Assembly: GCF_000142905.1 (NCBI RefSeq)
Contig: NW_013657652.1
Location: 62,001 to 126,000 of the forward strand
DNA length: 64,000 nt
DNA from: Thecamonas trahens ATCC 50062
Lineage: Eukaryota; Protista; Apusomonadida
Direction of reading: 5' to 3'
Below the pieces are notes generated by a model. The model did no database searches. It was not told the DNA's origin and saw nothing but the letters and a program-made list of their open reading frames with translations. Positions 1 through 14,595 of this stretch are shown piece after piece (position 1 is the first letter of the stretch; the number at the start of each line of letters is the position of its first letter). The position numbers were made by a program, and so were the translations under genes.

Positions 1-3000
1 TAATGCTGATGAGGAAGCGAGGCTAGAGTCATCGCTGGGTACTCGCTCTCCCTTTCGTCGCCCTTTGGGATCAACAAGACTTCCTCCTCGAAAACAGCTC
101 GTTTCGTTTGTCGAGCCGCAAGTCGTGCAAGAGTATCCAACCTTGGAAGGCAACGAGGGGGTGTACACCTCGCGGGCTCTTGGTTTCTTCACCATCAACT
201 CCTCGCTCCGGGCTACTGCCATCCGTATCGTCGACGCCCAGTGGTTCACCTACCTTGTCCTTGCTGTTATTGTCGTCAACACTGGTTTCATCTCGGCGTC
301 TACTCCGAGCGATGACCCAAGCTCCACCAAGACCCGCGTGCTCGATGTGGCCGAGCTCACCTTTATGGCCTTCTTTACCCTGGAGATGATGCTCAAGATA
401 CTCGCTTTTGGCGCCTTTGCTCACCATCACGCCTATCTCCGCTCCGGATGGAACGTCTTTGACTTTACCATTGTTTGCCTCGGCTACCTCTCGCTCATGG
501 CGCTGCCCATTCTCGCCGGCTCCAACGTCACCGCCCTCCGCACCCTCCGCGTCTTTCGCCCGCTTCGAACTCTCCGCACCATCCGCTGGTTCCGCGGCCC
601 GCGCACCCTCGTCCGCTCGGTCATCGTCTCGCTACCGGGCCTCTTTGATGCCACTGTCCTCCTCCTCTTCTTCATCGCCATCTACGGCATCATGGGCGTG
701 CAACTCTTCGGCGGCGCCCTCCGCCAGCGATGCGTGCACGCTTCCACCGGCGAGCTCGCCCCGCTCACTGCCCGCCTCTGTGGCCTGGCTGACAATACCG
801 CCGGCCTCTCCTGCCCGCCGGACTACGTCTGCACCGCCGCCGGTCCCAATCCGGGACACGGCTTTGAGTCGTTTGACCACTTTGGCGTCGCTGTCATCGT
901 CCTCTGGAACGTTCTCAACCTCGACGGCTGGTCCGCCCTCATGTACTCGCTACAGGACGCCGTCTCGCCGTGGGTGTGGCTCTACTTTGTCACCTTTACA
1001 CTCCTGCTCTCGTTCTTTGCCGTCACTCTCTTCCTCGCCATCCTCACCGAGTCATTCACTATCACCGCCGAGGAAGAAGAGGTTGCCGCAGCTGCCGACC
1101 GCGCACGCTCCATCCGCCGCCAGGCCTCGCAAACAGGCGTCGCCGCGGGCGTCCTCGCCGCTGCCTTTGCCGCGCCGAGCATCCGCAGCCAGGCCTCGGA
1201 GCCGCAACCGACCCAACGCGCCGCCTCGCTCGAACGCGGCTGGTCCATTGTGGCCGACGCGCGCCGCGTCGCAGACAACACCACGTGGCTGGAGGGCAAG
1301 CCTGCTTGGATCGTGCAGCTCAATGCCGTTGTCCGCTCGCCCACCTTCTTCTTCACCGTCCTTGCCCTCATCCTTCTCAACACCGTCGTCCTCGCCGCCG
1401 AGCATCATGGCATGTCGCCGGCGCTCAAGGACTGGCTCGATGCCTTTAACGTCTTCTTCATCGTCCTCTTTGCCATTGAGCTTGCCATCCGCATCGTCGG
1501 TCTCGGCCCGCGCCAGTTTGGCAAGGACTACTTTAACGTCTTTGACTCGCTCGTCGTTGCCCTCTCCATCCTCGAAGTTGCTCTTGGCTGGTCGTCGGCC
1601 ATCTCGGTCTTCCGCGTCGTCCGCCTCCTCCGCGTCGTCCGCATCCTTCGCGTCATGCGATTTGTCAACCGCCTCTCCTCGCTGCGACGCCTCCTTGACA
1701 CGGTCACCTCCGGCATCGCCGCCGTCTCGTACACTGCCGTCCTCCTCTTCCTTCTCCTCTTCATTTTTGCCATTGTCGGCATGGAGTTGTTTGGCGGCTC
1801 GTACTCTGCCCAGCCTGGACGTGCCAACTTTGACACACTCTACTGGTCGTTTGTCGCCGTCTTTCAGACCTTTACCGGTGACCGCTCATCAGACTTGCTC
1901 TACGAAGGCATGCGCACGACCACTGTGGTCGGCGCCATCTACTTTGTCGCCCTCACCGCAGTCTCCATCATCCTCAAGTTTCTCTTCCTCGCCGTCATCC
2001 TCCACTACTTTACCCACCCATACTCGCCCGACGACCCACTTGCAGGCTCGCTCTCCTCACTCGTCACGCAGGACTCGGGCTCGACCGGTACCGCTGCCAA
2101 GCAACAGCCGCGCACGCCCACACCCCAGCTTCCGGACCCGCCGTCGCCGCCACAAGGCCGCATTCCGTTCCCCGCCGTCCCGGCCTCGATGACAGCCGCG
2201 CCCTCTCCGCCCACGCCGCAGACTCCCGCCGAAACCGCCGCCGTCGGCAGTGAGCGTAGCTCTGACTCGGCGTCGCCGTCACCCGGCGGCGACTCGCTCC
2301 GCACTGCCATGTTCCGCGCCTCTGCCGAGGCAAGCCGCGCGGCCCAGCAGTGGAGTGGGGCCAAGACCAGGACCCGCCCGCGGTCGTCGTCACTCCGCTG
2401 GCAGCTGCGGTCCAAGAACGCCTCCAGGTTTACCCCCGAAAAGGCCGAGGCCTTCCAGGTTGCGCCCATCCCCAGCTACAGCGACCTCGCCAAACTCCGC
2501 CAGCAGAAGATCGACCACGCCAACTCGGCCGAGCTCCATCGGCTGGCCACCGTCAAGATGTTCACGGCCGCACCACCCAAGCCCAAACCAGCTTCGGTCG
2601 TCAGCGCCATCGCTGCTAGCAAGCACCCACTCCCGCCCTCGGCCGACCCGTACGCGCAGGACGCGGCCGAGACCGAGGCTGCAGCCGCCGCATCCTCGGT
2701 CCCTGTCCACCGTAGGCTTGGTGTGGCACTCGACGACTCGGGCTATGCTATGTCCATGCGCTCGCATCAGCGGGCATGGCAGGCGCAGCAGCTCCGCGAA
2801 CAACTGGAAGCCAGCGGGACGATCGCCCACGACCACGCCGTCGAGCCGCCGCCGGACCCGTCGGTTCTTGATCCATCCGGCCCGTCGATGCGGTCACCGC
2901 TCTCGCGTGGCGCCGACGCGCCGCGCCGCAAGCGCCGCAAGCGCCGGGTCCGCCGCCTCCCCGACGCCGCATCGCGGCTAGTCCTTGTCAAGAATGAGCT

Positions 3001-5595
3001 CCTTGTCCCGCGCGGCGGGCGTGAGGCCCATGCCCGCGAGCGCGCCGCCTCGCGCGAGCGCTCCGCACATCCACGCAAGCGCGGCTCGGGTCTGCCGCTG
3101 GTTGGCTACGCATGCTTTCTCTCGCGGCGGTCGTGGATCCGAGTCTGGCTTCACTCGATTGTCTCTGCGCCATGGTTCGAGCCGTTCATCAACGTGTGCA
3201 TCGTGCTCAACTGCGTGTTCATGGCGCTCGACCACCCGGCGGTCGACTCGGCGTCGCCGCTCGGGCGAGCCATCTTTTTGCAAGACTGGGGCTTTCTCCT
3301 TCTGTTCACCGCCGAGGTTCTCGCCAAGATGGTGGTGTACGGCGTGTGGTGGGCCGAGTACGCGTACCTCCGCGACAACTGGAACCGTGTAGATGCTGCC
3401 GTCGTCGCCCTTGCCTGGCTTGGCCTTCCTTTCGGCAACGTGCTCCGGGGCTTGCGTGGCTTCCGTGCTCTCCGTCCGCTCCGGCTTGTCATCCGCTCGG
3501 CCAAGCTCCGGCTGGTGGTCACTGCGCTCTCCAACGCGGTGCCGTCGATGCTACAAATTGTGGTCATTACCCTTGTGTTTTGGCTCATGTTTGGCATCAT
3601 GGGCGTGACACTCTTCAAAGGCCTCTTCTACGCCTGCAATGATCCGTCTGTTGCTGGGCGCGCAGAGTGCGTCGGCGCCTTTGACCCGGACCCAGTGGTG
3701 ACCAACGGCACGCTGCTTGCCGGTACCGCCATTCCGCGAGTCTGGGCCAACGCGCCGTACTCATTCGACAACATTGGCGAGGCCATGCTCACTCTTTTTG
3801 AGGTCTCGATGCTCCACGGCTGGGCAGACATCATGCGCTCGGGCACCGACGCGACTTCGGTCGACCTCCAGCCATCGCCGTCGAGCAAGCCGGCTGCAGC
3901 CATCTACTTTATTGCCTTTATTGTCTTTGGCTCTCTCTTTGTCCTCAACCTCTACATCGGCGTTGTCCTCGACCACCTCAACCAGATGACTTACCGCCGG
4001 ACTGCGCTTGGCTCGGGCCGGCTGGCATCTATGGCCACACCGGGCCTATGGTCGTTGGTCACGCCTGCACAGCGCAAACTTATCCTCACCCAGCGCGTGC
4101 TTGAGGCGACCCAGCCGGAGCGGCCGCCGCCAGCGGTGCCAACCAACCCATTCCGGTTCGAAGCGTATCGCCTTGTCTCGGCACCGCTGTTTGAGGTCGG
4201 TGTCGTGGCCGCCATCTTGCTCAACGGCATCATCCTCACCATCGCACACTACCAGCAGCCGAGCGAGGTGACAGACACCCTGTTTGTCGCCAATGTCGTG
4301 TTTGTCATTCTCTTTACCCTCGAGCTGGTACTCAAGGTCGCTGCCTGGGGGCCGACCTACTACCTTGGCGACGGATGGAACCGGTTCGACGCCGCTGTTG
4401 TCGCTCTCTCTCTCCTCGGCCTCGCCTTGCGATCGGGTGTGGCCCCACCAACTGTCCGAGTCCTCCGTGTCGGGCGGCTGTTCCGGCTGGCGAAGCGGAC
4501 CCAGACGCTCAACCGCCTGTTCAAGACACTCCTCCACTCACTCCCGTCGCTCTTCAACATCGGCGCGCTCGTCGGCGTCGTCTTCTTTGTCTATGCGCTA
4601 CTGGGCGTCTCGCTCTTTGGTCGTGTCCGCGTCGCCACGGCGCCGGGCGAGCCGGGCTTCTCGCCGCGTGCCTCTTTCTCGCGGTTTGACTACGCGCTGC
4701 TCACGCTCTACCGCGTGGCGACCACGGATGGTTGGGCGGAAGTGATGCGGGCGGCGCAGCTGCAGCCGCCGCAGTGCGATCCCGCGGCCGACAACTGTGG
4801 CTCGTCGTGGGCTTCGCTCTACTTCATCTCGTTTGCGCTCACTGGCACCTTTGTCATGCTCAACCTGTTCATTGCGGTGGTGATGGAGAACTTTGCGGAC
4901 AACGCCGTCATTCCGCCGCAAAAGCTGCGGGTCATCAAACGGTTCAAGCGGTCATGGGCGGCTTCGGATCCCGAGTCGACGGAGTACGTCACGCCGCAGG
5001 ACCTCATTCTGGTCATGCAGCGGTTGCCGGTGGCCTACTCGGAGCCGTGGGACGAGGCCGACCCAAGTCGCGGGCGTCGGCGCTGGCGGCTGTCGCCGAG
5101 GCCGGCCTTCGGATCCACGGCGTCGGCGAGTCGATGAAGGTCTGTGGCGTGACGCTCCCGTGGTTTTGCTCGCAGCCGCATCCGTCGGGGGTGTACTTTA
5201 AGGATGTGCTGATGTACGTGGTGGCCATTGCCATCGCCCGCGAGGCCGAGGGCCTCACCGACGACATCGAAGCGAGCGAAGACCTGCCGCCGCCGATGGT
5301 TGTCCCTGTCTCGCCGGTCATGAGTTCAGCGTCGTCGTCGACAGCGGTGTCGTCGACCACCTCCGCCGACGATCTCCCGCCGCGCGAGCTCGACTTGGGA
5401 GCATCGAGCGACTCGGTCGCCTCGTACTACACCTCGAGCTATGCAGACAGTTTCGACGGTTCGAGTGCCATCGAGCTGGACGAGCTTGCCGCCGTGAGCT
5501 CGGACCTGCTTTCGGAGCTCTCCGAGGCGGCGCGGGGCAGCTCGTATTACTCATCGTACTCGTACGCGTATGAGAGCTCAGGGGAGACACGTTAG
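1..5595 (+). CDS. Four-domain voltage-gated cation channel alpha subunit (Nav/Cav superfamily); 5'-partial, one apparent frameshift at ~5062-5064
   Basis: Four 6-TM repeats with Arg-rich S4 segments (LRTLRVFRPLRTLR; FRVVRLLRVVRILR; LRGLRGFRALRPLR; VRVLRVGRLFRLAK) and four P-loops. The frame is open from base 2, so the start lies upstream of the window. A Nav/Cav-like C-terminal tail (...VYFKDVLMYVVAIA) continues in the 4732..5595 frame if one base is added at gacccaag. Confidence 0.93.
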
Positions 5596-8500
5596 TGCAC
5601 CTTCGAGGACGTCGCCCAGGCCGATAAACAGGGGGTCGTACGGATCGCAGGCGACGAGTTCGGCCTGTAGGCGGGCCCGCAGACTGCTTGGTGGCACCCC
5701 GAGCAGCTCGGCGGCTGGATCTGGCAACGAGTTGGCGACCAGCGACGCCGCAACATACGGTAGCGACCAGGCCATCGCGGCCGGGAGGAGGTGCAACGAG
5801 GTGGCAGCAGCCCATGGGTCGGGATGCGGTGGCGGAGAACCCAGTCGGTTGAGGACCGCGCGCAAGATCGGTGCGTTGGTCACCGCCAGCCGAGGCACTT
5901 GGGACGTCCGCAGCAGCAGTGCAATGAGTGCGTCGTCGGGCACCAGCTCTGCCGTGCTCAACCAGTCCAGCGCCACCGTCCGGACGCGGTGGTCTTCCGA
6001 AAGCAGAGCCACGCAGAGAGCGGCGCGCTGGACGGCCGGCTCGGGCACGTCGAGGCGGGTAGTGACCAAGAATGAAGTCTCGTCATGATCGAGCGCGTCG
6101 CGAAGTGAGTCAAAGCGGGCAAAGGCGTCCACAACAGCAGCATCTGGCAGCATCATGACCGTGAGGCGCCAGAGCGACGCCGGGTCTTCGGACGTTGCCG
6201 CTGCGCCATGTACCAGCGCAGTTACGGTGGTGTCAGGCACACCGGCGGAGCGTAACTCTTGGATACGGGCCAGCTGTAGCTCCAGTGCGTGCGGAGGCAG
6301 GGGCTGTGGAATGGCTGCGCCCTGGGTAGGGTGGGCGGCAGTTGGTGGTGCTGCTGTGGTGAGTGAGGGCGAGGGTGAGAGTGCAGACTCGGGTGCGACC
6401 TCGACGACAAAGTCGTCGTCAGACCCCACGTCCCAGCCCTCGCCATCATCAGACGCGACGTCGACGACAGGCGCAGGCGTGATGAACTCGGGTGCAGCCT
6501 CGGGTGCGGCCTCGGATGTGGCTTCGGCCTCGACGACAAACCCACCATCAGACCCCAAGTCCCACCCGTCGCCATCATCAGACGCGACGTCGACGACAGG
6601 CGCAGGCGTGATAGACTCGGGTGCAGCCTCGGGTGCAGTCTCGGGTGCGGCCTCGGGTGTGGCTTCGGCCTCGACGACAAAGTCGTCATCCGACCCCACG
6701 TCCCACCCGTCGCCATCATCAGACGCTACGTCGACGACAGGCGCAGCTGCGACAAACACGGCTTCAGTCTCGGGTGCGGCCTCGACGACAAAGTCGTCGT
6801 CAGACCCCATGTCCCAGCCCTCGCCATCACCCGACGTGACGTCGACGGCAGGCGCAGGCGTGATGAGCTCGGGTGCAGCCTCGGGTGCGGCCTCGGGTGC
6901 GGCCTCGGGTGTGGCTTCGGCCTCGACGACAAAGTCGTCATCCGACCCCACGTCCCACCCGTCGCCATCATCAGACGCGACGTCGACGACAGGCGCAGCT
7001 GCCACAAACACGGCTTCAGTCTCGGGTGCGGCCTCGACGACAAAGTCGTCGTCAGACCCCATGTCCCAGCCCTCGCCATCATCAGACGCGACGTCGACGA
7101 CAGGCGCAGGCGTGATAAACTTGGGTGCGGCCTCGGGTGCGGCCTCGGATGCAGCCTCAGGCGTGACAAGCTCGGGTGCCGCCTCCACCTCGACGACAAA
7201 GTCATCATCAGACCCCACGTCCCAGCCCTCGCCATCATCAGACGCGACGTCGACGACAGGCGCAGCTGCCACAAACACGGCTTCAGTCTCGGGTGCGGCC
7301 TCGACGACAAAGTCGTCGTCAGACCCCATGTCCCAGCCCTCGCCATCACCCGACGTGACGTCGACGGCAGGCGCAGGCGTGATGAGCTCGGGTGCAGCCT
7401 CGGGTGCGGCCTCGGGTGCGGCCTCGGGTGTGGCTTCGGCCTCGACGACAAAGTCGTCATCCGACCCCACGTCCCACCCGTCGCCATCATCAGACGCGAC
7501 GTCGACGACAGGCGCAGCTGCCACAAACACGGCTTCAGTCTCGGGTGCGGCCTCGACGACAAAGTCGTCGTCAGACCCCATGTCCCAGCCCTCGCCATCA
7601 TCAGACGCGACGTCGACGACAGGCGCAGGCGTGATAAACTTGGGTGCGGCCTCGGGTGCGGCCTCGGATGCAGCCTCAGGCGTGACAAGCTCGGGTGCCG
7701 CCTCCACCTCGACGACAAAGTCATCATCAGACCCCACGTCCCAGCCCTCGCCATCATCAGACGCGACGTCGACGACAGGCGCAGCTGCCACAAACACGGC
7801 TTCAGTCTCGGGTGCGGCCTCGACGACAAAGTCATCATCAGACCCCACGTCCCAGCCCTCGCCATCATCAGACGCGACGTCGACAACATGCGCTGCTGCG
7901 GCAAACACGGCTGCAGCCTCGGGTGTGGCCTCGGGTGCGGCCTCGGTCTCGACGACAAACCCACCATCAGACCCCAAGTCCCAGCCCTCGCCATCATCAG
8001 ACGCGACGTCGACAACAGGCGCTGCTGCGACAAACTGGGGTGCAGCCTCAACAACACATCCATCATCAGATCCCATGTCCCAGCCGTCGCCATCACCCGA
8101 CACAGACCCCAGGTCCCAGCCACCTCCACCCGCCAACCCGGCGGGGGACGTCGGAACAGAGACAAAGGCATCACCTTCGCCGTCCTCGCCACTCGCCCAT
8201 GCGTCGCTGCCGTCGGACGCAGAGCCGCCGCCCCAGTCGTCGAGCCCAAACACCACACTTTCGTCGACATCGCCACCGCTCCACTCGCTATCGACACTTG
8301 CGCTCTCCCATGCCCCGCCATCCCACGCTGCAGCATCGGCCTCAGCCACTGCCTGCTCAAGCTCCGCCACAATGCTTGCCGCCACAGCTCGCCGCTCATC
8401 GGAAACCTCGGCGTCACTCACGCACTCGCGCGCGGCCTCCACAACACCGGCGAGCACATTACGCGGTGCGTCGTCAGCAACAGTTGCAAGCGCGAGCAGC

Positions 8501-11500
8501 AACTCGCTCACATCCACCGCTGTGCTTCGGATTCCAGACTTGAACGCACTCGCAAACAGCATGCCGGCCTCCATACCGAGCCCAAACGCTGCTGCCACCC
8601 GCATCACAGCTCCATACGCCACTCCGCCCACAATCATTGTCATCAGTGCCGCGTAGAGCGCCTCGCTGCTCCCGGCACTGGCGTCTAGCGCGCTCAGGTG
8701 CGCTCGCACGCACTGCAAACTCGCGGCTCGCTCGATCCGCAAAATTGTCTGTACATGGAGCGCCAGCTCTCGTGCAACAAAGCCGCGCTCGTTACCCAGC
8801 CCGGCGCCCAGCGCATGCAGCACCCGGACCCGCTCTTCGCGGCTTGCTCTGCCCATGTACGGCGCCCCTCGCGCCACTCCCTGCGCCACAAGTCCAGCGT
8901 GCTCGTCTGACACCCACTCCAGCGGTACAGCTCGCCCGAGCGCGCCCACGTGCTGCGCCATCGCCGCCCCGTTGCTGCCACACAGCACGCGGTCGAGCGC
9001 CGCAAACACCACAAGCGATCGGCTCACCGCTCCGCGTCCCAGCGCGCCCACAACAAGACTCGGCCCGCCGCGAGCAATCGCGCCCACATTCCGCACATTG
9101 AGCCACCGAAGAAGCACCGAAGCCACTGCGCCTTCGCCAGACTCCGCCTCAACAAGCAGCCCGTAGTCGGCCCGTGGCATCTCGAGTGCAAGCAGTCTCA
9201 GACCCTCCACGTGATCCGCCCATTGGCTGGCCGCAATCCCGAGGAGCCGCCCGCCATACGTAGCAGCATCCTCGCCGGCAGCCTCGATTCCAAGCACAAA
9301 CAGCAGCAGCCACATCGGGCACAGCACAGCGCCCTCCTCTCCTCGCGCAGCTGCGCTCGCCTCACCGCACGACACCACAGCGTCGAGAACAGCTCCTCGC
9401 TCGGCTACTTGCGCCAGCGCGCCACGGTAAGCCTCAACGCATGCGGCGGCCCGTGCCCGGAGTTCCTCCACGCGACCTCCCCGAGCCAGCGCTAGACACT
9501 CAGCAAGCCGCGCCGCCAGCACATCGTGCGCAAAGCCGGCCACATCAGCTACGCCATGCTCTGCCGCAAGCTCCAGTGCCGCCACCACGCTGTCGTCGTC
9601 ACGGGCGAGCGCAAGCAGTGCCTCGCGCATACTACCAGCTGTGGCTCTCACCCCATGAGCCTCGAGTACCCTTCTCAGCTTATCGGCTGTGCAGGCCTCT
9701 TCAAGCTCGCGTCCCAGCGCAGCGGTCTCGGTCGTCGCCGCCAGTGCCGAAATCACCTCATCCACTGAGCTCTGCAGTGCCTTGCGCCCCAGACCACACA
9801 CGCTCGCTGCCGTCAGGTAGCCCCGCAGCACTGCAAGCGATCCTGCAGGTGCGTCAGCAGCCGTGGCCAGCTCCACAACGCCGGCCACCGCAGCATCCTG
9901 AACAGCACGCGGCACGCACGCCAGCATCGCCGTCAGAAGCACCACGTCAGAGCATGCCAGTGCAGGCGCGGCACGGACAACAGCCTGTTCAAACGCCTCA
10001 CCGCCACACAGTGCCGCCGCATGCAGGTACATCTCCATCAGCCGCGGCACAACTCCCTGGCCAGGCCCGCCACCATACGCCAGAAGCGGCGTCTGTGGCC
10101 GCCGCGCAAAGCCCTCGTACAATGCGTACACCCACGGCTGGTGCGGCAGCTCGCCCATCCACGACTTGAGCCGTCGCTCCAGTGCGCCGTGCCACTGCGG
10201 CCGGTCGAGCGCTCGCCACAACGACTGCACAGCATCTGCCACGCCGTCAGGCACGACCACAGCCGGCTCGCCGCTGCCAGCTTCCTCGCTGCTGCTCGCA
10301 ACAACCCGCGATCGCAGAAACGACGCCGCGTGTGCCGCAGAACTCGACAATCGCTTCAGCGAGAGCCCGCTTGCCTCGCCGCCGATCTCTCGCTCACGTC
10401 CCGCAGCTTTCTCACCCAACGCCTCCACCACCGCAGCCTGGACCTCCAGGCTCCCAATCGTCTCCAGAAGCCCCACCAGCGAATTGCCGTCGGCTCCGGC
10501 CAGCGCTGCCCGACCAAGCTCTAGCCGCTCGCGATACAGAGTCCACTCGCCATCGCAGATCAAGGGGAGCGCCAGCTCGATAAACTCGCGTTCGTGACCG
10601 CCGTCGCGCAGCTCGCGCGCAAGTCGAAGAGCCACCCCGTACGAGCCCTGTGCGTGCGCTGACTGGCCAATCACAACCTTAACCCGTGCCTGGTCTTCGT
10701 TGTCGTCGAGCCCCAGCCGCTTTGCCAGCCGCAGCACCGCCGTTGGGTCGCGATGCGCCGTCGGCTTGGACGCCAGCACCTGCCCAATGAGCTCAACCGG
10801 CTGTGCAAGTCGCACTTGCAGCGGCACTACCGGCACACCATACGAGTCCACAAGCTCTACAGCCTCGATCAGCTTCAGCTCAGCTTCCACCGCAGAGCAG
10901 CCCGCCTGACGCGCATCGCCGCTCGGCCCTGGGAGGAGCTGCAGCGCCCGTCGCGCATGCTGCACCGCCACATCGTCCAGAGCTGCCGCCGAGTTGAACC
11001 ACTCGCGCGCCACTTCGAGCACGAGGCCCTCCAGAACATGTCCCGGAATCTTGCTCGCCAGCGCAGACACGCTGTCAAACTGTGCCTCTCCGAGAAGCGT
11101 CGCCACCGCCAGCCGGTACACCTCCTCCCGACCCAGGAGATCTCCAAACAGCACCCCGCACACATCCGCCACAGTCTCTACCGCAGCGAGCTGCTCACGG
11201 CTCCGTCCGCCGCTTCGTCGCACCGCACTCGCCACTGCCTTTTTCGCCACCGCCTTACCGTCGGCCCCGTCGCGGGCTGTCCGCCCAAATGCAGACGGCG
11301 AGAGCACGACATCAAGTCCGCGCAGCAACGCCAGTGCTTCAAGCTGTTCGACGAGTCTCGCAACATCGCCTCCAAGCAGCGTCTCCTCGCCGCGAGGTGC
11401 TGCGCCCAGTGCCGCCGCCGCCTCGCTCAGCCGCGCATCGTGGATCGCCGCCGCAGACTGAGGCACCTCCACGTATGCCACGCCCAGCAGGACCGCGGCC

Positions 11501-14500
11501 CGATCGTCCCAGCTCGCCAGGTACGCTGGTGATGCCACGACGGCGTGCACTTGTGCCAACACCTGACACACGCACTCCCCAAGCTGCTCGGAGCTCATCT
11601 CCGCCTCGCCGAGATTCTCCACTGCACCAGCAAGCCCGCTCGCCAGCCATCGCGGGAGCTCGGCACTGAGCGACGCCTCGTAGTGACTCGGCCACACTCC
11701 CAGCAGCGGCACCACCCACCGTGCCAGCGCTGCCTCTAGCGACACCGCCGGCCCGTCTCCGCCATCAAACACGAGCGATGGGCTAAGAATTGCGTCAAAC
11801 ACTTCAGGTGCAGACAGGCTCCGCAGCGCGGCGATACTCCACATACCCGTGCGCGGTGGCGGAGGCGCCTGAAGATCGTACACAAGGATCGAGAGCGTGT
11901 CAAGCTCGGTCGCCACAAGCTCCAGACCTGGCGTGTTGTGCGGCGGCACCATCGCCAGCGAGATCCACGCCTCGGCCACGTCGACAAGTCCTGTTTCGGC
12001 CTCGACAGCCAGCGCCCGTTGGCACCACCAGTTGATGACCTCGTCGACCGACGGCGGCCTGCTCCGCGCTGCAAGCTCGGCTTCGCTTGTTGCAGGCGGC
12101 CAGACCGCTGGTAGCCATCCGGTATCGGTACTGGCCAGGGTATGGGCGTACTCGGCCTTCAGCACCTCGGGGCTCGGCACCAGCCCAGTCGCAGCGCTTG
12201 TCCGCTGAGGCGGCGCGTACCACGCCACGACATACAGCTTGTCATCGTCGCTGCCGCTGATGCACGGGAGAAGGAGCGAAAACGTCTCCGGAGGCTCAGT
12301 CAGCGGGAGCTCGGCAATAATCGCCAGGTACGACGGCAGCGTCTCGGTGGGGAAAAAGGTAAACAGCACCTCCAGCGCAGTTACCGCGCCACTGCGCGCT
12401 GCGTCCAGCGCCACCTCAGCGAGGTTGGCATCGCGGAACTGCAAAAAGGCCATTGGATCAAAGCCGGCACCGTGAATCCGCACAAACGCCTCCAGTCGGT
12501 CTGCGTACTGCGCCAGCCGCAGCGCACATCGCACACCCTCCACCGATGCCCCAGTGCCAGGCAGCGCCGGCTCGAGCTCCGCGAGCAGCTCCGCGCCGTA
12601 TCTATACAGAGCTCGCGCCTGGTGCACATCGTCCGGCACGTACTCGACCACTTGCGCCAGCACCCACTCTTTGTCGACCACAGGATCAAGCATGGCGTGC
12701 AGGGCGTCGGCGTCAAAGCTGCCTCGCGTCGCGTGCCACTGCGCCTGATACACAGGGTCGGTCGAGAGCCCGCGTGCTAGTGCCACCTCGAGCGCCGCGC
12801 CATAGTCACCCGCAGCAATTCGCCGCCGACACAGCTGTAGCGGCGTCGTTTGCACCAGCGACGCCAGCCCGCTCGTCCGTGCTGGCACGTCCACCTGGAG
12901 CCACGCCGGGTGCGCCCATTGGACCTCGTTGCCGGTCAGCCGCATCAGCAGCGTCCGCGTCATCGCCGAACACCACGACAGCTGCTCACCGGTCTCGGCC
13001 ACCTCGCTAGCCTCGCTTCCGTCGTCATCGCTGCACTCGTCGTCGGCGTCGTCGCCTCCAAAAGCCGCCCGCGAGTGCCGCCCGCCGGCAACCGTTCCGG
13101 TCGGCGACGACAACGGCGTGGCGTCAAAATTGCTCAACGCCAGCAGCGGCTCGCCCCAGGCTGCAGGCACCGCAATGGTACTCGTCCGCGAGCCATAAAT
13201 CCACGTCGTAGCCGTAAGCGGCGACGAAACAAGCACCGGCGCTGCCCCATACGCCTTGAACGCCACCTCCTCGCCCACCGGCGTCTCTGCCCACGGCTGC
13301 CGCACAAGCGCCACCGCGCCCGACACAAAACCGGCCGCGAGTACCTCGTCCGAAAACCATGCGAGACTCACAACACGGCTCGACTCGCCGGTAAGCTCGG
13401 CAAACTGTGTCGGTGAGAAGAGTGCCGTCACCGTAGTCGGCGCCTCGCTCGCCAGATCATACAGCGCCACTCCGCCGTCGCCAGTGTGGCTCGCCAGGTA
13501 GCACGAGGACGCACCGCCTTCGCCACGCTGTGGTGGCGCGAGCTGGAGCCCGACGAGGCCGCACGCCAGGGCCGCACGCGACACGCCATCAGCGGCCCAT
13601 GGCAGCCACGACCGCGGTACGGGCTCGGCCATCGACGTCGACGCTGCCGCCAACTCGAAACTGCCCGTTCCCGGTCCCTGGAAGGTGTGGAGCGAGAGCG
13701 ACGGCGCCCACTCTAGCGCCGCGCCCGCCCGCCGCCGCGCTCCGCCCACAACCAGCGTCTTTCGGGATGCATCCCACGCCAGCGCCCGCACCAGTGTGTG
13801 ATGCTGGTCGAGATCCGCGACTTGGCCGAGAATATCGACCTCTGTCACATTGTGCTCGGCGAGCTCGCCTTCAGCGGCCCGGACGCCGGCGACAACAATT
13901 CTGCCGTTGCCGGTCCGCAGCGCCAGCTCGATGCGCGTTACACCTGCGCGAGCACTCCCATCCGCCGCCGCCGCCCACACCACCACAGCCTCGGCCACGC
14001 TGAACGGAACGCTGACGTCGGCGACTACGATCAGATCGGCGGTGGCTGAGCCTGCCGGCGGCACATACCGCAGCACAACCAGCCTTGATTGCGGCTCGCT
14101 CCGATCCGGCACAACAAGAACAAGGACAGGAGTCTCCGGAAGCCAAGCAATCGAAGCCTCCAGCAGCGAGCCGCCCGGAGTGTAGAGCGCAAACGGAGCC
14201 GGCGGTGCTGCAGTGTGTTCGGCTGAGAAGATCAGCACATGCTCGGCCGATGTGAGGCCGAGCAGCGGAAGCGAGTCATGCGCAACAGCAGACGGACGGC
14301 GAATGACTTTGCCAGCCAAAGTCACATTGCCGGATCCCAGAATTGAATCTGAGTCGCCATCACCATCACCATCACCATCACCATCGCCATCGTCATCGTC
14401 ATGGCCTCCATGAGAGTGGCGGCGGAGTGTGGCGGCCAGTGGAGGCACTCGACACGTGGCTGTCTCGGACAAGGGACGGAAGGGGAAAGCCTTGGTAGCG

Positions 14501-14595
14501 AGTTCGGGAAGCAGTTCTCGGACAAACGGTCCATGTTGCGTCACGTCGTAGAGGTACTCTTCCTCCTCTCCTACTCTGGACTCACTGCTCGCCAT
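5578..14595 (-). CDS. NBAS: Neuroblastoma-amplified sequence / Sec39 / MIP2 homologue (Dsl1-NRZ ER tethering complex), 3005 aa
   Basis: N-terminal beta-propeller-like region, then TTPLQLCRRRIAAGDYGAALEVALARGLSTDPVYQAQW and FRDANLAEVALDAARSGAVTALEVLFTFF...LAIIAELPLTEPPETFSLLLP, matching remembered NBAS/Sec39-domain motifs; single long ORF. Confidence 0.88.
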   Translation of the reverse strand: MASSESRVGEEEEYLYDVTQHGPFVRELLPELATKAFPFRPLSETATCRVPPLAATLRRHSHGGHDDDDGDGDGDGDGDGDSDSILGSGNVTLAGKVIRRPSAVAHDSLPLLGLTSAEHVLIFSAEHTAAPPAPFALYTPGGSLLEASIAWLPETPVLVLVVPDRSEPQSRLVVLRYVPPAGSATADLIVVADVSVPFSVAEAVVVWAAAADGSARAGVTRIELALRTGNGRIVVAGVRAAEGELAEHNVTEVDILGQVADLDQHHTLVRALAWDASRKTLVVGGARRRAGAALEWAPSLSLHTFQGPGTGSFELAAASTSMAEPVPRSWLPWAADGVSRAALACGLVGLQLAPPQRGEGGASSCYLASHTGDGGVALYDLASEAPTTVTALFSPTQFAELTGESSRVVSLAWFSDEVLAAGFVSGAVALVRQPWAETPVGEEVAFKAYGAAPVLVSSPLTATTWIYGSRTSTIAVPAAWGEPLLALSNFDATPLSSPTGTVAGGRHSRAAFGGDDADDECSDDDGSEASEVAETGEQLSWCSAMTRTLLMRLTGNEVQWAHPAWLQVDVPARTSGLASLVQTTPLQLCRRRIAAGDYGAALEVALARGLSTDPVYQAQWHATRGSFDADALHAMLDPVVDKEWVLAQVVEYVPDDVHQARALYRYGAELLAELEPALPGTGASVEGVRCALRLAQYADRLEAFVRIHGAGFDPMAFLQFRDANLAEVALDAARSGAVTALEVLFTFFPTETLPSYLAIIAELPLTEPPETFSLLLPCISGSDDDKLYVVAWYAPPQRTSAATGLVPSPEVLKAEYAHTLASTDTGWLPAVWPPATSEAELAARSRPPSVDEVINWWCQRALAVEAETGLVDVAEAWISLAMVPPHNTPGLELVATELDTLSILVYDLQAPPPPRTGMWSIAALRSLSAPEVFDAILSPSLVFDGGDGPAVSLEAALARWVVPLLGVWPSHYEASLSAELPRWLASGLAGAVENLGEAEMSSEQLGECVCQVLAQVHAVVASPAYLASWDDRAAVLLGVAYVEVPQSAAAIHDARLSEAAAALGAAPRGEETLLGGDVARLVEQLEALALLRGLDVVLSPSAFGRTARDGADGKAVAKKAVASAVRRSGGRSREQLAAVETVADVCGVLFGDLLGREEVYRLAVATLLGEAQFDSVSALASKIPGHVLEGLVLEVAREWFNSAAALDDVAVQHARRALQLLPGPSGDARQAGCSAVEAELKLIEAVELVDSYGVPVVPLQVRLAQPVELIGQVLASKPTAHRDPTAVLRLAKRLGLDDNEDQARVKVVIGQSAHAQGSYGVALRLARELRDGGHEREFIELALPLICDGEWTLYRERLELGRAALAGADGNSLVGLLETIGSLEVQAAVVEALGEKAAGREREIGGEASGLSLKRLSSSAAHAASFLRSRVVASSSEEAGSGEPAVVVPDGVADAVQSLWRALDRPQWHGALERRLKSWMGELPHQPWVYALYEGFARRPQTPLLAYGGGPGQGVVPRLMEMYLHAAALCGGEAFEQAVVRAAPALACSDVVLLTAMLACVPRAVQDAAVAGVVELATAADAPAGSLAVLRGYLTAASVCGLGRKALQSSVDEVISALAATTETAALGRELEEACTADKLRRVLEAHGVRATAGSMREALLALARDDDSVVAALELAAEHGVADVAGFAHDVLAARLAECLALARGGRVEELRARAAACVEAYRGALAQVAERGAVLDAVVSCGEASAAARGEEGAVLCPMWLLLFVLGIEAAGEDAATYGGRLLGIAASQWADHVEGLRLLALEMPRADYGLLVEAESGEGAVASVLLRWLNVRNVGAIARGGPSLVVGALGRGAVSRSLVVFAALDRVLCGSNGAAMAQHVGALGRAVPLEWVSDEHAGLVAQGVARGAPYMGRASREERVRVLHALGAGLGNERGFVARELALHVQTILRIERAASLQCVRAHLSALDASAGSSEALYAALMTMIVGGVAYGAVMRVAAAFGLGMEAGMLFASAFKSGIRSTAVDVSELLLALATVADDAPRNVLAGVVEAARECVSDAEVSDERRAVAASIVAELEQAVAEADAAAWDGGAWESASVDSEWSGGDVDESVVFGLDDWGGGSASDGSDAWASGEDGEGDAFVSVPTSPAGLAGGGGWDLGSVSGDGDGWDMGSDDGCVVEAAPQFVAAAPVVDVASDDGEGWDLGSDGGFVVETEAAPEATPEAAAVFAAAAHVVDVASDDGEGWDVGSDDDFVVEAAPETEAVFVAAAPVVDVASDDGEGWDVGSDDDFVVEVEAAPELVTPEAASEAAPEAAPKFITPAPVVDVASDDGEGWDMGSDDDFVVEAAPETEAVFVAAAPVVDVASDDGDGWDVGSDDDFVVEAEATPEAAPEAAPEAAPELITPAPAVDVTSGDGEGWDMGSDDDFVVEAAPETEAVFVAAAPVVDVASDDGEGWDVGSDDDFVVEVEAAPELVTPEAASEAAPEAAPKFITPAPVVDVASDDGEGWDMGSDDDFVVEAAPETEAVFVAAAPVVDVASDDGDGWDVGSDDDFVVEAEATPEAAPEAAPEAAPELITPAPAVDVTSGDGEGWDMGSDDDFVVEAAPETEAVFVAAAPVVDVASDDGDGWDVGSDDDFVVEAEATPEAAPETAPEAAPESITPAPVVDVASDDGDGWDLGSDGGFVVEAEATSEAAPEAAPEFITPAPVVDVASDDGEGWDVGSDDDFVVEVAPESALSPSPSLTTAAPPTAAHPTQGAAIPQPLPPHALELQLARIQELRSAGVPDTTVTALVHGAAATSEDPASLWRLTVMMLPDAAVVDAFARFDSLRDALDHDETSFLVTTRLDVPEPAVQRAALCVALLSEDHRVRTVALDWLSTAELVPDDALIALLLRTSQVPRLAVTNAPILRAVLNRLGSPPPHPDPWAAATSLHLLPAAMAWSLPYVAASLVANSLPDPAAELLGVPPSSLRARLQAELVACDPYDPLFIGLGDVLEGALTCLP
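6390..8130 (-). repeat. Coding tandem repeat in NBAS: 15 x GWD[VML]GS acidic motif, with a 519-bp higher-order unit
   Basis: 15 GWD(V/M/L)GS cores counted in the translation. Identical shadow ORF starts at 6873/7392 and 7176/7695 show a 519-nt period. Confidence 0.95.

What the first reader, a model, noticed from the sequence alone, without database searches (positions are those of the whole stretch)
923..4729. Four-domain channel with a non-canonical D/D/H/D selectivity ring
Seen: the filter positions read NLDGW (D, 923-925), TGDRS (D, 1880-1882), MLHGW (H, 3815-3817) and TTDGW (D, 4727-4729). The usual Trp after the domain II filter is missing (GDRSSD vs GEDW/GEW). Known: Nav1 is DEKA, Nav2 DEEA, Cav1/2 EEEE, Cav3 EEDD, NALCN EEKE. 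Inference: a titratable His at the position of the Nav domain III Lys could give pH-dependent switching between Ca2+ and Na+ selectivity, or Zn/Ni block. All four S4 sensors are intact, so the gene does not look like it is decaying.
Basis: partly seen in the sequence, partly recalled or inferred. Interest (0 to 1): 0.85.

Follow-up and report, generated by a model that had tools for sequence, protein, structure and literature searches.

The report
Thecamonas channel with histidine pore ring
This is a real, intact and selectively maintained gene of the marine flagellate Thecamonas trahens for a four-domain voltage-gated cation channel whose pore ring reads Asp/Asp/His/Asp; the histidine was already flagged in a 2018 survey, but what it does is still untested.

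Summary
The window is Thecamonas trahens ATCC 50062. The gene is AMSG_06300, "Thecat5" of Pozdnyakov et al. 2018, which NCBI names a T-type calcium channel.

- **Filter ring.** Codons 923-925 GAC, 1880-1882 GAC, 3815-3817 CAC and 4727-4729 GAT align without gaps to the EEEE/EEDD filter residues of solved and reference Cav channels.
- **His codon is not an error.** It is unchanged in two culture read sets and in a 2025 estuary metagenome.
- **Selection.** That environmental strain differs by 15 synonymous and 4 non-synonymous changes (pN/pS about 0.1), so the gene is under purifying selection.
- **Phylogeny.** It is not a Cav3, Cav1/2 or Nav member. It belongs to a 100%-supported trio of T. trahens paralogues with D/D/x/D rings. 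The other two carry Val (GTC) in domain III, so His is a derived, two-step replacement of Val, not of a Nav-type Lys.
- **Domain II oddities.** It lacks the near-universal pore Trp (257 of 261 relatives have it). It also has a unique Arg just above the ring.
- **Relatives.** No orthologue beyond near-identical strains was found.
- **Prior literature.** The 2018 paper already noted a His-bearing filter in Thecamonas and called its selectivity unpredictable.
- **Function.** The pH-switch idea is plausible but untested.

The parts
1..5029 (+). Main coding frame of the channel gene. It continues upstream of the window to an in-frame ATG at window -280, which is G000:C28:61720.
   Evidence: L002, 1805-aa open frame; 100% identity to the NCBI T. 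trahens protein P0001; 4x Ion_trans.
38..121 (+). In-frame 84-nt GT..AG stretch that the NCBI model removes as an intron (N-terminal cytoplasmic part). Whether it is spliced is unknown.
   Evidence: no RNA evidence was obtained.
167..1069 (+). Domain I (S1-S6). S4 lies at 533-604 (8 R/K). The S6 Asn is replaced by Thr (1013-1045).
923..925 (+). Domain I filter residue Asp402 (GAC), in the motif NLDGW.
   Evidence: the X3 contig 505-1101 is identical.
1307..2029 (+). Domain II (S1-S6). S4 lies at 1607-1672 (7 R/K). The S6 Asn is not conserved (1967-2002).
1880..1888 (+). Domain II filter Asp721 (GAC), then Arg722 (CGC) at the HFS+1 'beacon' position, then Ser723 (TCA) in place of the conserved pore Trp.
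   Evidence: R unique; W in 257 of 261.
3122..3979 (+). Domain III (S1-S6). S4 lies at 3443-3511 (8 R/K). The S6 Asn is kept.
3815..3817 (+). Domain III filter residue His1366 (CAC), in the motif MLHGW. It aligns with the Cav3.1 domain III Asp, the Cav1 Glu and the Nav1 Lys.
   Evidence: The codon is unchanged in X1, X3 and the estuary metagenome X7.
4052..4063 (+). III-IV linker motif SLVT, aligned with FMT/FLT of the paralogues and with IFMT of Nav1 (a putative fast-inactivation latch).
   Evidence: This is the hydrophobic-triplet-T(S) motif class of Pozdnyakov 2018.
4142..4894 (+). Domain IV (S1-S6). S4 lies at 4454-4498 (6 R/K). The S6 Asn is kept.
4727..4729 (+). Domain IV filter residue Asp1670 (GAT), in the motif TTDGW.
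5030..5067 (+). A 38-nt GT..AG stretch that NCBI treats as an intron to reach the C-terminal frame. It contains the ccc run (5059-5061) where the estuary strain has one extra C.
5068..5595 (+). C-terminal cytoplasmic tail in the +1-shifted frame. Its last 18 nt overlap the 3' end of the convergent 3005-aa gene.
   Evidence: GC3 is 0.82 in this frame against 0.60 and 0.53 in the others. The X7 variant at 5145 is synonymous in this frame. There is a weak match to the post-IVS6 region of another channel, E 0.42. ORF list.

Best explanation
This is an intact, expressed-type gene (AMSG_06300 / Thecat5) for a four-domain voltage-gated cation channel. It belongs to a Thecamonas-specific trio of D/D/x/D channels.

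**Shown.**
- It has four charged S4 sensors and a Nav-like III-IV linker latch (SLVT).
- The pore ring is Asp/Asp/His/Asp.
- Domain II has an Arg directly above the ring and no pore Trp.
- The gene is under purifying selection.
- The His is derived from Val.

**Inferred.**
- It opens on depolarisation and inactivates.
- Three short Asp carboxylates, one non-acidic domain III residue and the Arg722 positive charge should bind Ca2+ more weakly than EEEE or EEDD pores. It should therefore pass monovalent cations (Na+) as well as Ca2+.
- His1366 faces the permeation path. It most likely adds graded sensitivity of conductance or block to external protons and transition metals (Zn2+, Ni2+, Cu2+). 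A clean all-or-none Ca/Na switch is less likely.
For: - **Identity and architecture:**
- **Filter alignment:**
- **Codon confirmed:** three read sets, including an independent estuary metagenome, show it unchanged.
- **Selection:** 15 synonymous against 4 non-synonymous differences. None lies in a pore loop or S4. pN/pS is about 0.10.
- **Phylogeny:** the trio with C11_269k and C32_8k (both D/D/V/D) has SH-aLRT 100 in the LG+C20 tree and 100/100 in the careful LG+G4 tree.
- **Derived His:** Val is GTC in both paralogues against CAC here.
- **Domain II:** the Arg at HFS+1 is unique and the Trp is lost.
- **Role of HFS+1:** it sits at the pore entry just above the ring and governs Ca versus Na phenotype, per the abstract of Spafford 2023, PMC10120453.
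- **Transcription hint:** a marine metatranscriptome holds a 182-nt contig of the gene that carries the same two variants as the estuary strain.
Against: - No electrophysiology exists for this or any D/D/x/D four-domain channel.
- No structural model of the complete pore could be made. The pKa of His1366, its orientation and the effect of the missing domain II Trp are therefore all inferred.
- The S6 Asn is lost in domains I and II. This could alter or abolish normal gating.
- At seawater pH of about 8, an unperturbed His would be neutral.
- The transcription evidence is weak: one short metatranscriptome contig, and DNA carry-over is not excluded.
Confidence: 0.5

Rival explanations
1. True pH switch. 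Protonated His1366 mimics the domain III Lys of DEKA, EEKE or D/D/K/D filters and makes the pore Na+-selective. The neutral His leaves a Ca2+-preferring D/D/x/D pore. Physiological pH changes would then flip the carried ion.
For: - The His sits exactly at the domain III position of the Nav1 and NALCN Lys.
- Three neighbouring carboxylates should raise its pKa towards seawater pH (inference).
- Lys-bearing D/D/K/D filters exist in oomycete and cryptophyte channels (PMC5824947).
Against: - His is shorter and differently shaped than Lys. Pozdnyakov et al. state that selectivity of His or Arg filters cannot be predicted.
- Arg722 and the 10 mM Ca2+ / 50 mM Mg2+ of seawater would lower the His pKa (inference).
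- The paralogues manage with a non-titratable Val.
- There are no experimental data.
Confidence: 0.15
2. The His is a functionally near-neutral filler. In this clade the domain III ring position only has to be non-acidic (S, N, A and V occur in relatives). His at pH 8 behaves like those, and selectivity is set by the three Asp.
For: - Paralogues have Val.
- Related protist clades have Ser, Asn or Ala at this column: D/D/S/D and D/D/N/D in diplonemids, S/D/S/D in a Symbiodinium-like dinoflagellate, A/D/S/D in Cafeteria, and D/D/A/D in a metagenome.
Against: - Going from GTC to CAC takes two nucleotide changes, through Asp or Leu.
- The His is retained in an independent natural strain, within a gene at pN/pS 0.1.
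- His is unique among 261 aligned channels.
- An imidazole in a 3-carboxylate ring is unlikely to be chemically silent (inference).
Confidence: 0.25
3. A non-conducting or poorly conducting voltage sensor. Loss of the domain II pore Trp and of the S6 Asn in domains I and II has crippled the pore. The protein is kept for voltage-dependent signalling to partners.
For: - The domain II Trp is present in 257 of 261 relatives but absent here.
- The S6 Asn is replaced in domains I and II.
- Purifying selection cannot tell conduction from sensing.
Against: - The paralogue C32_8k also lacks the domain II Trp, and several relatives have Ser at the IIS6 Asn column. These changes are therefore tolerated in the clade.
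- The other three pore loops, and the ring itself, are canonical in spacing.
- None of the 4 non-synonymous differences falls in the pore.
Confidence: 0.08
4. Sequencing or assembly artefact, or a decaying pseudogene.
For: - The reference is an older draft.
- A probable 1-nt homopolymer problem lies at 5059-5061.
- Gene models in this genome are unreliable.
Against: - CAC is covered without any difference by contigs from a 2010 run, a 2020 run and a 2025 estuary metagenome.
- There is a 1805-codon open frame.
- The differences split 15 synonymous to 4 non-synonymous.
Confidence: 0.01

Closest known systems
T. trahens paralogues at G000:C11:268.9-273.1k and G000:C32:8.1-12.4k (D/D/V/D), probably the other members of clade WSC II of Pozdnyakov et al. 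2018
   Same: - They form a 100%-supported clade with this gene and share up to 44% identity over 1007 transmembrane columns.
- The D/D/x/D ring has the same flanks: (L/M)xGW in domain III and DGWS in domain I.
- They carry an FMT/FLT-type III-IV latch.
- C32_8k also lacks the domain II Trp.
   Different: - They have Val (GTC) where this gene has His (CAC).
- They have Ser, not Arg, at domain II HFS+1.
- C11_269k keeps the domain II Trp and all S6 Asn residues.
Animal Cav3 (T-type) channels, EEDD; this is the NCBI product name of the gene
   Same: - Four-domain voltage-gated architecture.
- The domain III-IV half scores best against Cav3.1-3.3 structures: 495 bits against about 440 for Cav1/2 and Nav.
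- Asp rather than Glu in part of the ring.
   Different: - The ring is D/D/H/D, not E/E/D/D.
- The domain III Lys before the filter (SKDGW) is absent.
- The Cav3 clade (4 rows, 100/100) excludes this gene. A forced sister grouping costs 63.9 lnL, p-AU 0.0525.
- The domain I-II half scores best against Cav1.1.
Nav1 (DEKA) and Nav2 (DEEA/DEES), including the T. trahens Nav2 (P0002, DEES)
   Same: - Asp in domain I and a non-acidic residue breaking the ring symmetry.
- The basic or titratable residue is at the same domain III position as the Nav1 Lys.
- A hydrophobic-T latch in the III-IV linker.
   Different: - It lies outside the Nav clade (100/100).
- Domain II has no one-residue deletion (GE-W) as in Nav.
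- Domain IV is Asp, not Ala, Ser or Gly.
- It has His, not Lys.
Protist D/D/S/D, D/D/N/D, S/D/S/D, A/D/S/D and D/D/A/D four-domain channels (diplonemids Flectonema and Rhynchopus, a Symbiodinium-like dinoflagellate, Cafeteria), and the D/D/K/D channels of oomycetes and cryptophytes described in PMC5824947
   Same: - Asp-based ring with a non-acidic domain III residue.
- They group with the trio on the same side of a 92/92 (95* in the larger tree) split, away from Cav1/2, Cav3 and Nav.
   Different: - None has His.
- All keep the domain II Trp.
- Identity is only about 35%.
- The grouping of these clades with each other is not well supported (83/66 to 92/92).
- None has been characterised functionally, as far as the library shows.
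NALCN (EEKE/EKEE)
   Same: Four-domain channel with one basic residue in an acidic ring.
   Different: - Much weaker similarity: 275 bits against 560 for Cav1.1.
- NALCN has charge-poor S4s (PMC5824947), whereas here all four S4s are fully charged.

Membership tests
[quoted passage not shown] | Four tandem 6-TM Ion_trans units in one polypeptide | tested here: met
   Pfam PF00520 gives 4 stretches, E 3.9e-206. There are full-length matches to solved Cav and Nav chains, E 1e-167.
[quoted passage not shown] | Arg/Lys-rich S4 in each domain | tested here: met
   There are 8, 7, 8 and 6 R/K in S4 of domains I-IV. The strings match the Thecat5 S4s in Table S2 of PMC5824947.
[quoted passage not shown] | Pore-loop signature T/S-x-[filter]-x-W in every domain | tested here: not met
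   The signature is met in domains I, III and IV. Domain II has Ser in the Trp column (W in 257 of 261 relatives). This departs from the consensus signature, but the family assignment is not in doubt.
Cav3 / T-type (NCBI product name) | E/E/D/D selectivity ring | tested here: not met
   The ring is D/D/H/D.
Cav3 / T-type (NCBI product name) | Falls inside the Cav3 clade in a phylogeny | tested here: not met
   The Cav3 clade of 4 EEDD rows has 100/100 support and excludes the gene. A sister relationship is not formally rejected (p-AU 0.0525).
Cav3 / T-type (NCBI product name) | Helix-loop-helix gating brake in the proximal I-II linker | not tested
   The I-II linker is about 90 aa and of low complexity. 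No dedicated comparison was made.
Cav1/Cav2 (HVA) | E/E/E/E ring, AID in the I-II linker, pre-IQ/IQ in the C-terminus | tested here: not met
   The ring is not EEEE. The GPHH hit is below its cut-off (17.1 against 26.8 bits). The gene lies outside the Cav1/2 clade. AID and IQ were not searched for specifically.
Nav1/Nav2 | D/E/K/A or D/E/E/A ring, with the one-residue shorter domain II loop (GE-W) | tested here: not met
   The ring is D/D/H/D, and the domain II loop has Cav length. The gene lies outside the Nav clade, 100/100.
Nav1/Nav2 | Hydrophobic-triplet-T inactivation latch in the III-IV linker | tested here: inconclusive
   SLVT aligns with FMT/FLT of the paralogues and IFMT of Nav1, but it sits behind a lineage-specific insertion. 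Its function was not tested.
NALCN/Cch1 | E/E/K/E-type ring with charge-poor S4s | tested here: not met
   All four S4s are fully charged. Similarity to NALCN structures is far weaker than to Cav or Nav.
Apusomonad D/D/x/D trio (WSC II of PMC5824947) | Monophyly with the other T. trahens D/D/V/D channels | tested here: met
   SH-aLRT is 100 and UFboot/SH-aLRT are 100/100.

The most novel reading that the evidence does not exclude
His1366 would be a natural titratable stand-in for the Nav domain III lysine. With its pKa raised by three neighbouring Asp to near seawater pH, small external pH or metal changes would convert the pore between a Ca2+-permeable D/D/x/D state and a Na+-selective D/D/K/D-like state. 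A free-living flagellate would then have an ion channel whose carried ion is set by the environment.
Probability: 0.15. Interest if true: 0.8.

Novelty: already known. Interest (0 to 1): 0.42.

Why it matters
Thecamonas is the sister lineage of animals plus fungi. It is used to date the origin of Nav and NALCN channels.

This gene shows that the lineage also expanded a third kind of four-domain channel, with an Asp ring and a variable, non-acidic domain III residue. That is a natural experiment at exactly the position that makes animal sodium channels sodium-selective.

The three paralogues form a ready-made V/V/H series, with W or no W and S or R in domain II. They could be expressed side by side to ask how much of Na/Ca selectivity and of proton or metal block is set by this one residue.

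The practical points are more modest:
- The NCBI name (T-type alpha-1I) is misleading.
- The gene model is probably wrong at both ends.
- The His filter is a published but uncharacterised curiosity rather than a discovery.

Tried and rejected
1. **Sequencing error at CAC.** Rejected; three read sets agree.
2. **Pseudogene.** Rejected by the open frame and 15 synonymous: 4 non-synonymous differences.
3. **Cav3 orthology (NCBI name).** Not supported by ring or tree. The AU test of a Cav3 sister grouping is borderline (p 0.0525). The same test under the LG+C20 mixture on 83 rows did not finish in three 300-s runs and was dropped.
4. **Search for orthologues that would show whether His is conserved.** All of these found only T. 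trahens itself:
   - the word-indexed search of 5.8e9 proteins with the full length;
   - the same with the domain III-IV piece, to catch fragments;
   - the exhaustive phmmer search of 1.84e9 representatives;
   - a JGI metagenome scan.

   Everything else is 39% identical or less.
5. **Literature search for His substitutions in DEKA/EEEE rings, or for any recording from Thecamonas channels.** Nothing found.
6. **The C16 four-repeat locus (L008) as another R/H-bearing channel.** It is a different, K-channel-like 4x6TM protein with GE(F/Y/W) pores.
7. **No 3D model was made.** The four domains span about 1576 residues, over the 1200 limit, and a construct with linkers removed is not an unaltered sequence. 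Complex prediction was not used because no protein-protein binding is claimed.
8. **Handling of spliced and joined sequences.** The spliced or frame-joined C-terminal model was not sent to any search tool; all searches used uninterrupted references. ORF pieces of the paralogues were concatenated only inside local scripts, for alignment and trees.

Full report
**What the locus is**

The window is G000:C28:62001-126000 of a 28.7-Mb, 131-contig, roughly 63-65% G+C genome. The 1690-aa ORF listed from window 65 actually has no stop before the window start. An in-frame ATG 280 nt upstream opens an uninterrupted 1805-codon frame, L002 = C28:61720-67137.

The protein is 100% identical to an NCBI entry of Thecamonas trahens ATCC 50062. 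That entry is named 'voltage-dependent T-type calcium channel subunit alpha-1I' (P0001, 1773 aa). Pfam finds four Ion_trans units, E 3.9e-206. The best solved relatives are Cav1.1, Cav3.x and Nav1.x, all at E 1e-140 to 1e-167. NALCN is far weaker, at 1e-80.

The four codons are GAC (923-925), GAC (1880-1882), CAC (3815-3817) and GAT (4727-4729), all in frame. Several alignments place them at the filter:
- In a MAFFT alignment with 119 homologues, these columns are E/E/E/E in 102 sequences.
- In an HMM alignment of 261 channels they are E/E/E/E in 177, and D/D/H/D occurs once.
- phmmer against Cav3.1 aligns the motif mlHGW with skDGW, with no gap for tens of residues either side.

Domain II aligns ungapped to the Cav consensus, so Asp721 is the filter residue. 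Arg722 sits at the following 'HFS+1' position, and Ser723 replaces the pore Trp. Across the 261 channels:

| Column | Distribution | This protein |
|---|---|---|
| Domain II Trp column | W in 257 | one of only two with no aromatic |
| Domain II HFS+1 | D 150, N 70 | the only Arg |
| Domain III ring | E 210, D 28, S 17 | the only His |

All four S4 segments carry 6-8 Arg/Lys.

**The His codon is not an error, and the gene is under selection**

Contigs of four public runs were laid on window 1-5650. The CAC codon is covered without any difference by three of them:
- a 2020 run of the same organism (contig 3164-4385);
- a 2010 run (contig 3603-4029);
- a 2025 estuary metagenome (contig 3731-3924).

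The metagenome covers the whole gene at about 99.6% identity, so it represents a natural, slightly different strain. Of its 19 substitutions, 15 are synonymous and 4 are not. The four are W878S and R884K in the II-III linker, and T1475A and L1500V at the III-IV linker / IVS1. This gives pN/pS of about 0.10.

A marine metatranscriptome holds a 182-nt contig (4058-4239) with the same two variants as the estuary strain. That is a hint of transcription, not proof.

**Where it sits in the family**

The T. trahens genome has six Nav/Cav-type four-domain loci, plus one unrelated 4x6TM locus. The rings, read from ORF pieces aligned to the family HMM, are:

| Locus | Ring | Note |
|---|---|---|
| C12:280k | D/E/E/S | the published TtrNav2, P0002 |
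| C24:25k | E/D/E/E | |
| C12:50k | D/K/T/D | |
| C11:269k | D/D/V/D | |
| C32:8k | D/D/V/D | |
| this gene | D/D/H/D | |

Two trees were built. One was an IQ-TREE LG+C20 tree of 83 rows by 1010 transmembrane columns. The other was a careful LG+G4 tree of 44 rows. In both:
- This gene forms a clade with the two D/D/V/D paralogues (SH-aLRT 100; UFboot/SH-aLRT 100/100).
- It is sister to C32:8k (84; 98/73).
- The Cav1/2, Cav3 (four EEDD rows) and Nav clades are each 100/100 and exclude it.

The trio falls on the side of a 92/92 split (95* in the larger tree) that also holds these protist clades:
- D/D/S/D and D/D/N/D: diplonemids Flectonema and Rhynchopus;
- S/D/S/D: a Symbiodinium-like dinoflagellate;
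- A/D/S/D: Cafeteria;
- D/E/E/E and D/E/D/E: including Sulcionema.

Deep nodes are weak, as Pozdnyakov et al. also found. Forcing the trio to join Cav3 costs 63.9 lnL, with p-AU 0.0525. A sister relationship is therefore disfavoured but not formally rejected. The NCBI product name should not be read as orthology.

**The His is derived**

Both paralogues encode the domain III Val as GTC; this gene has CAC. On the tree (C11,(C32, this gene)), parsimony makes Val ancestral. His is then a two-step change, through GAC (Asp) or CTC (Leu).

The domain II Trp is kept in C11:269k (TGG) but replaced in C32:8k (GTG, Val) and here (TCA, Ser). The S6 Asn is lost here in domains I (Thr) and II, but kept in III and IV.

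The III-IV linker carries SLVT, aligned with FMT/FLT of the paralogues and IFMT of Nav1. This is the hydrophobic-triplet-T(S) class that PMC5824947 finds widely among protist channels.

**Prior knowledge**

Pozdnyakov, Matantseva and Skarlato (Sci Rep 2018, PMC5824947) analysed 277 four-domain channels, including seven Thecamonas entries.

The S4 strings of their 'Thecat5' (AMSG_06300.2) match this gene. Their text says that Thecamonas (clade WSC II) has a filter with Arg or His in place of Lys. It adds that the selectivity of such filters cannot currently be predicted.

This gene is the only T. trahens channel with His or Arg in the ring. The remark therefore refers to it, although their Figure 3, which lists the motifs, could not be read.

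No recording from any Thecamonas channel was found in the library, and no His substitution at the domain III locus. Other reviews mention only the Nav2 and NALCN homologues of this species.

**How it most likely works (inference)**

The charged S4s, the latch-like III-IV linker and purifying selection argue for a working, depolarisation-activated, inactivating channel.

The ring offers three short Asp side chains and one imidazole. An Arg at the domain II HFS+1 position lies directly above it. Spafford (2023, PMC10120453) places this site at the pore entry just above the ring and treats it as a main governor of Ca versus Na phenotype.

The net charge near the constriction is therefore about -2 with neutral His and -1 with protonated His. 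That compares with -4 in EEEE and -1 in DEKA. I expect:
- weaker Ca2+ binding than in Cav channels;
- appreciable monovalent permeability;
- proton and transition-metal sensitivity conferred by His1366.

Whether protonation produces a true selectivity switch depends on a pKa that cannot be derived from sequence.

**Gene-model notes**

The NCBI model differs from the open frame in four ways:
- It starts at M92 of the open frame.
- It removes an in-frame 84-nt GT..AG stretch (38-121).
- It removes a 38-nt GT..AG stretch (5030-5067) to reach a C-terminal tail in another frame (5068-5595).
- It has a further 3' exon.

The tail frame is coding-like. GC3 is 0.82 against 0.60 and 0.53 in the other frames. 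The one strain difference there is synonymous.

The estuary strain has an extra C in the ccc run at 5059-5061, which makes one continuous frame. There are two readings:
- The reference has a homopolymer error or a strain-specific frameshift.
- The tiny intron is real and carries a neutral indel.

The 2010 run does not cover this spot.

The NCBI model of the Nav2 paralogue removes a 158-nt 'intron' that deletes IIIS6 in the alignment. Models in this genome should be treated with caution.

**Limits**

- No full-pore 3D model was possible.
- No orthologue at intermediate distance exists in the searched collections.
- The joined C-terminal model was not sent to any search tool.
- ORF pieces of paralogues were joined only in local scripts, for alignment and trees.

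Noticed in passing
window 5030-5067 and 5059-5061: The only indel between the reference and the estuary-metagenome strain is an extra C in a ccc run inside the 38-nt 'intron' of the NCBI model. With it the channel ORF runs straight into the C-terminal tail frame. Either the reference has a homopolymer error or frameshift, or this is a real tiny intron carrying a neutral indel.
   Followed up: partly
window 38-121 and upstream L001:1220-1500: The open frame extends 91 codons upstream of the annotated start, and the annotated in-frame 84-nt intron keeps the frame either way. The true N-terminus is undetermined.
   Followed up: partly
L003 (G000:C12:279000-286000), nt 4521-4678: The NCBI model of the T. 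trahens Nav2 homologue (P0002) removes a 158-nt 'intron' that corresponds to domain III S6 and the start of the III-IV linker in the family alignment. It is probably a mis-annotation of a much-cited protein.
   Followed up: partly
L004 (G000:C11:267500-274500) and L006 (G000:C32:6500-14000): Two paralogous four-domain channels have D/D/V/D rings. C32_8k also lacks the domain II pore Trp (FTGDSVT). Together with this gene they form a natural V/V/H series.
   Followed up: yes
L007 (G000:C12:48500-56000): A very divergent four-domain channel with a D/K/T/D ring: Lys in domain II, and Phe for the Trp in the domain II loop. It has the longest branch in the tree (2.6 changes per column).
   Followed up: partly
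L008 (G000:C16:97500-104000): Four tandem 6-TM units with pore motifs LGEFP / TGEYP / TGDYP / GGEWA and short S4s. This is not a Nav/Cav-type channel; it looks like a concatenated K-channel-like or prokaryote-like cation channel.
   Followed up: no
window 5578-5595: The 3' end of the channel's tail frame and the 3' end of the convergent 3005-aa gene (5578-14595, minus strand, acidic Trp-repeat protein) overlap by 18 nt.
   Followed up: partly
L001:900-1215 (upstream of the window): The 5' flank holds a 20-nt tandem repeat (gatcgaacgagtgaatgatc), a long CA/CACATA microsatellite and a poly-C tract, directly before the upstream in-frame ATG (L001:1220).
   Followed up: no
window 4058-4239: A marine metatranscriptome contig and the estuary metagenome share the same two non-synonymous variants (T1475A, L1500V). 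This suggests a widespread environmental Thecamonas genotype distinct from ATCC 50062.
   Followed up: partly
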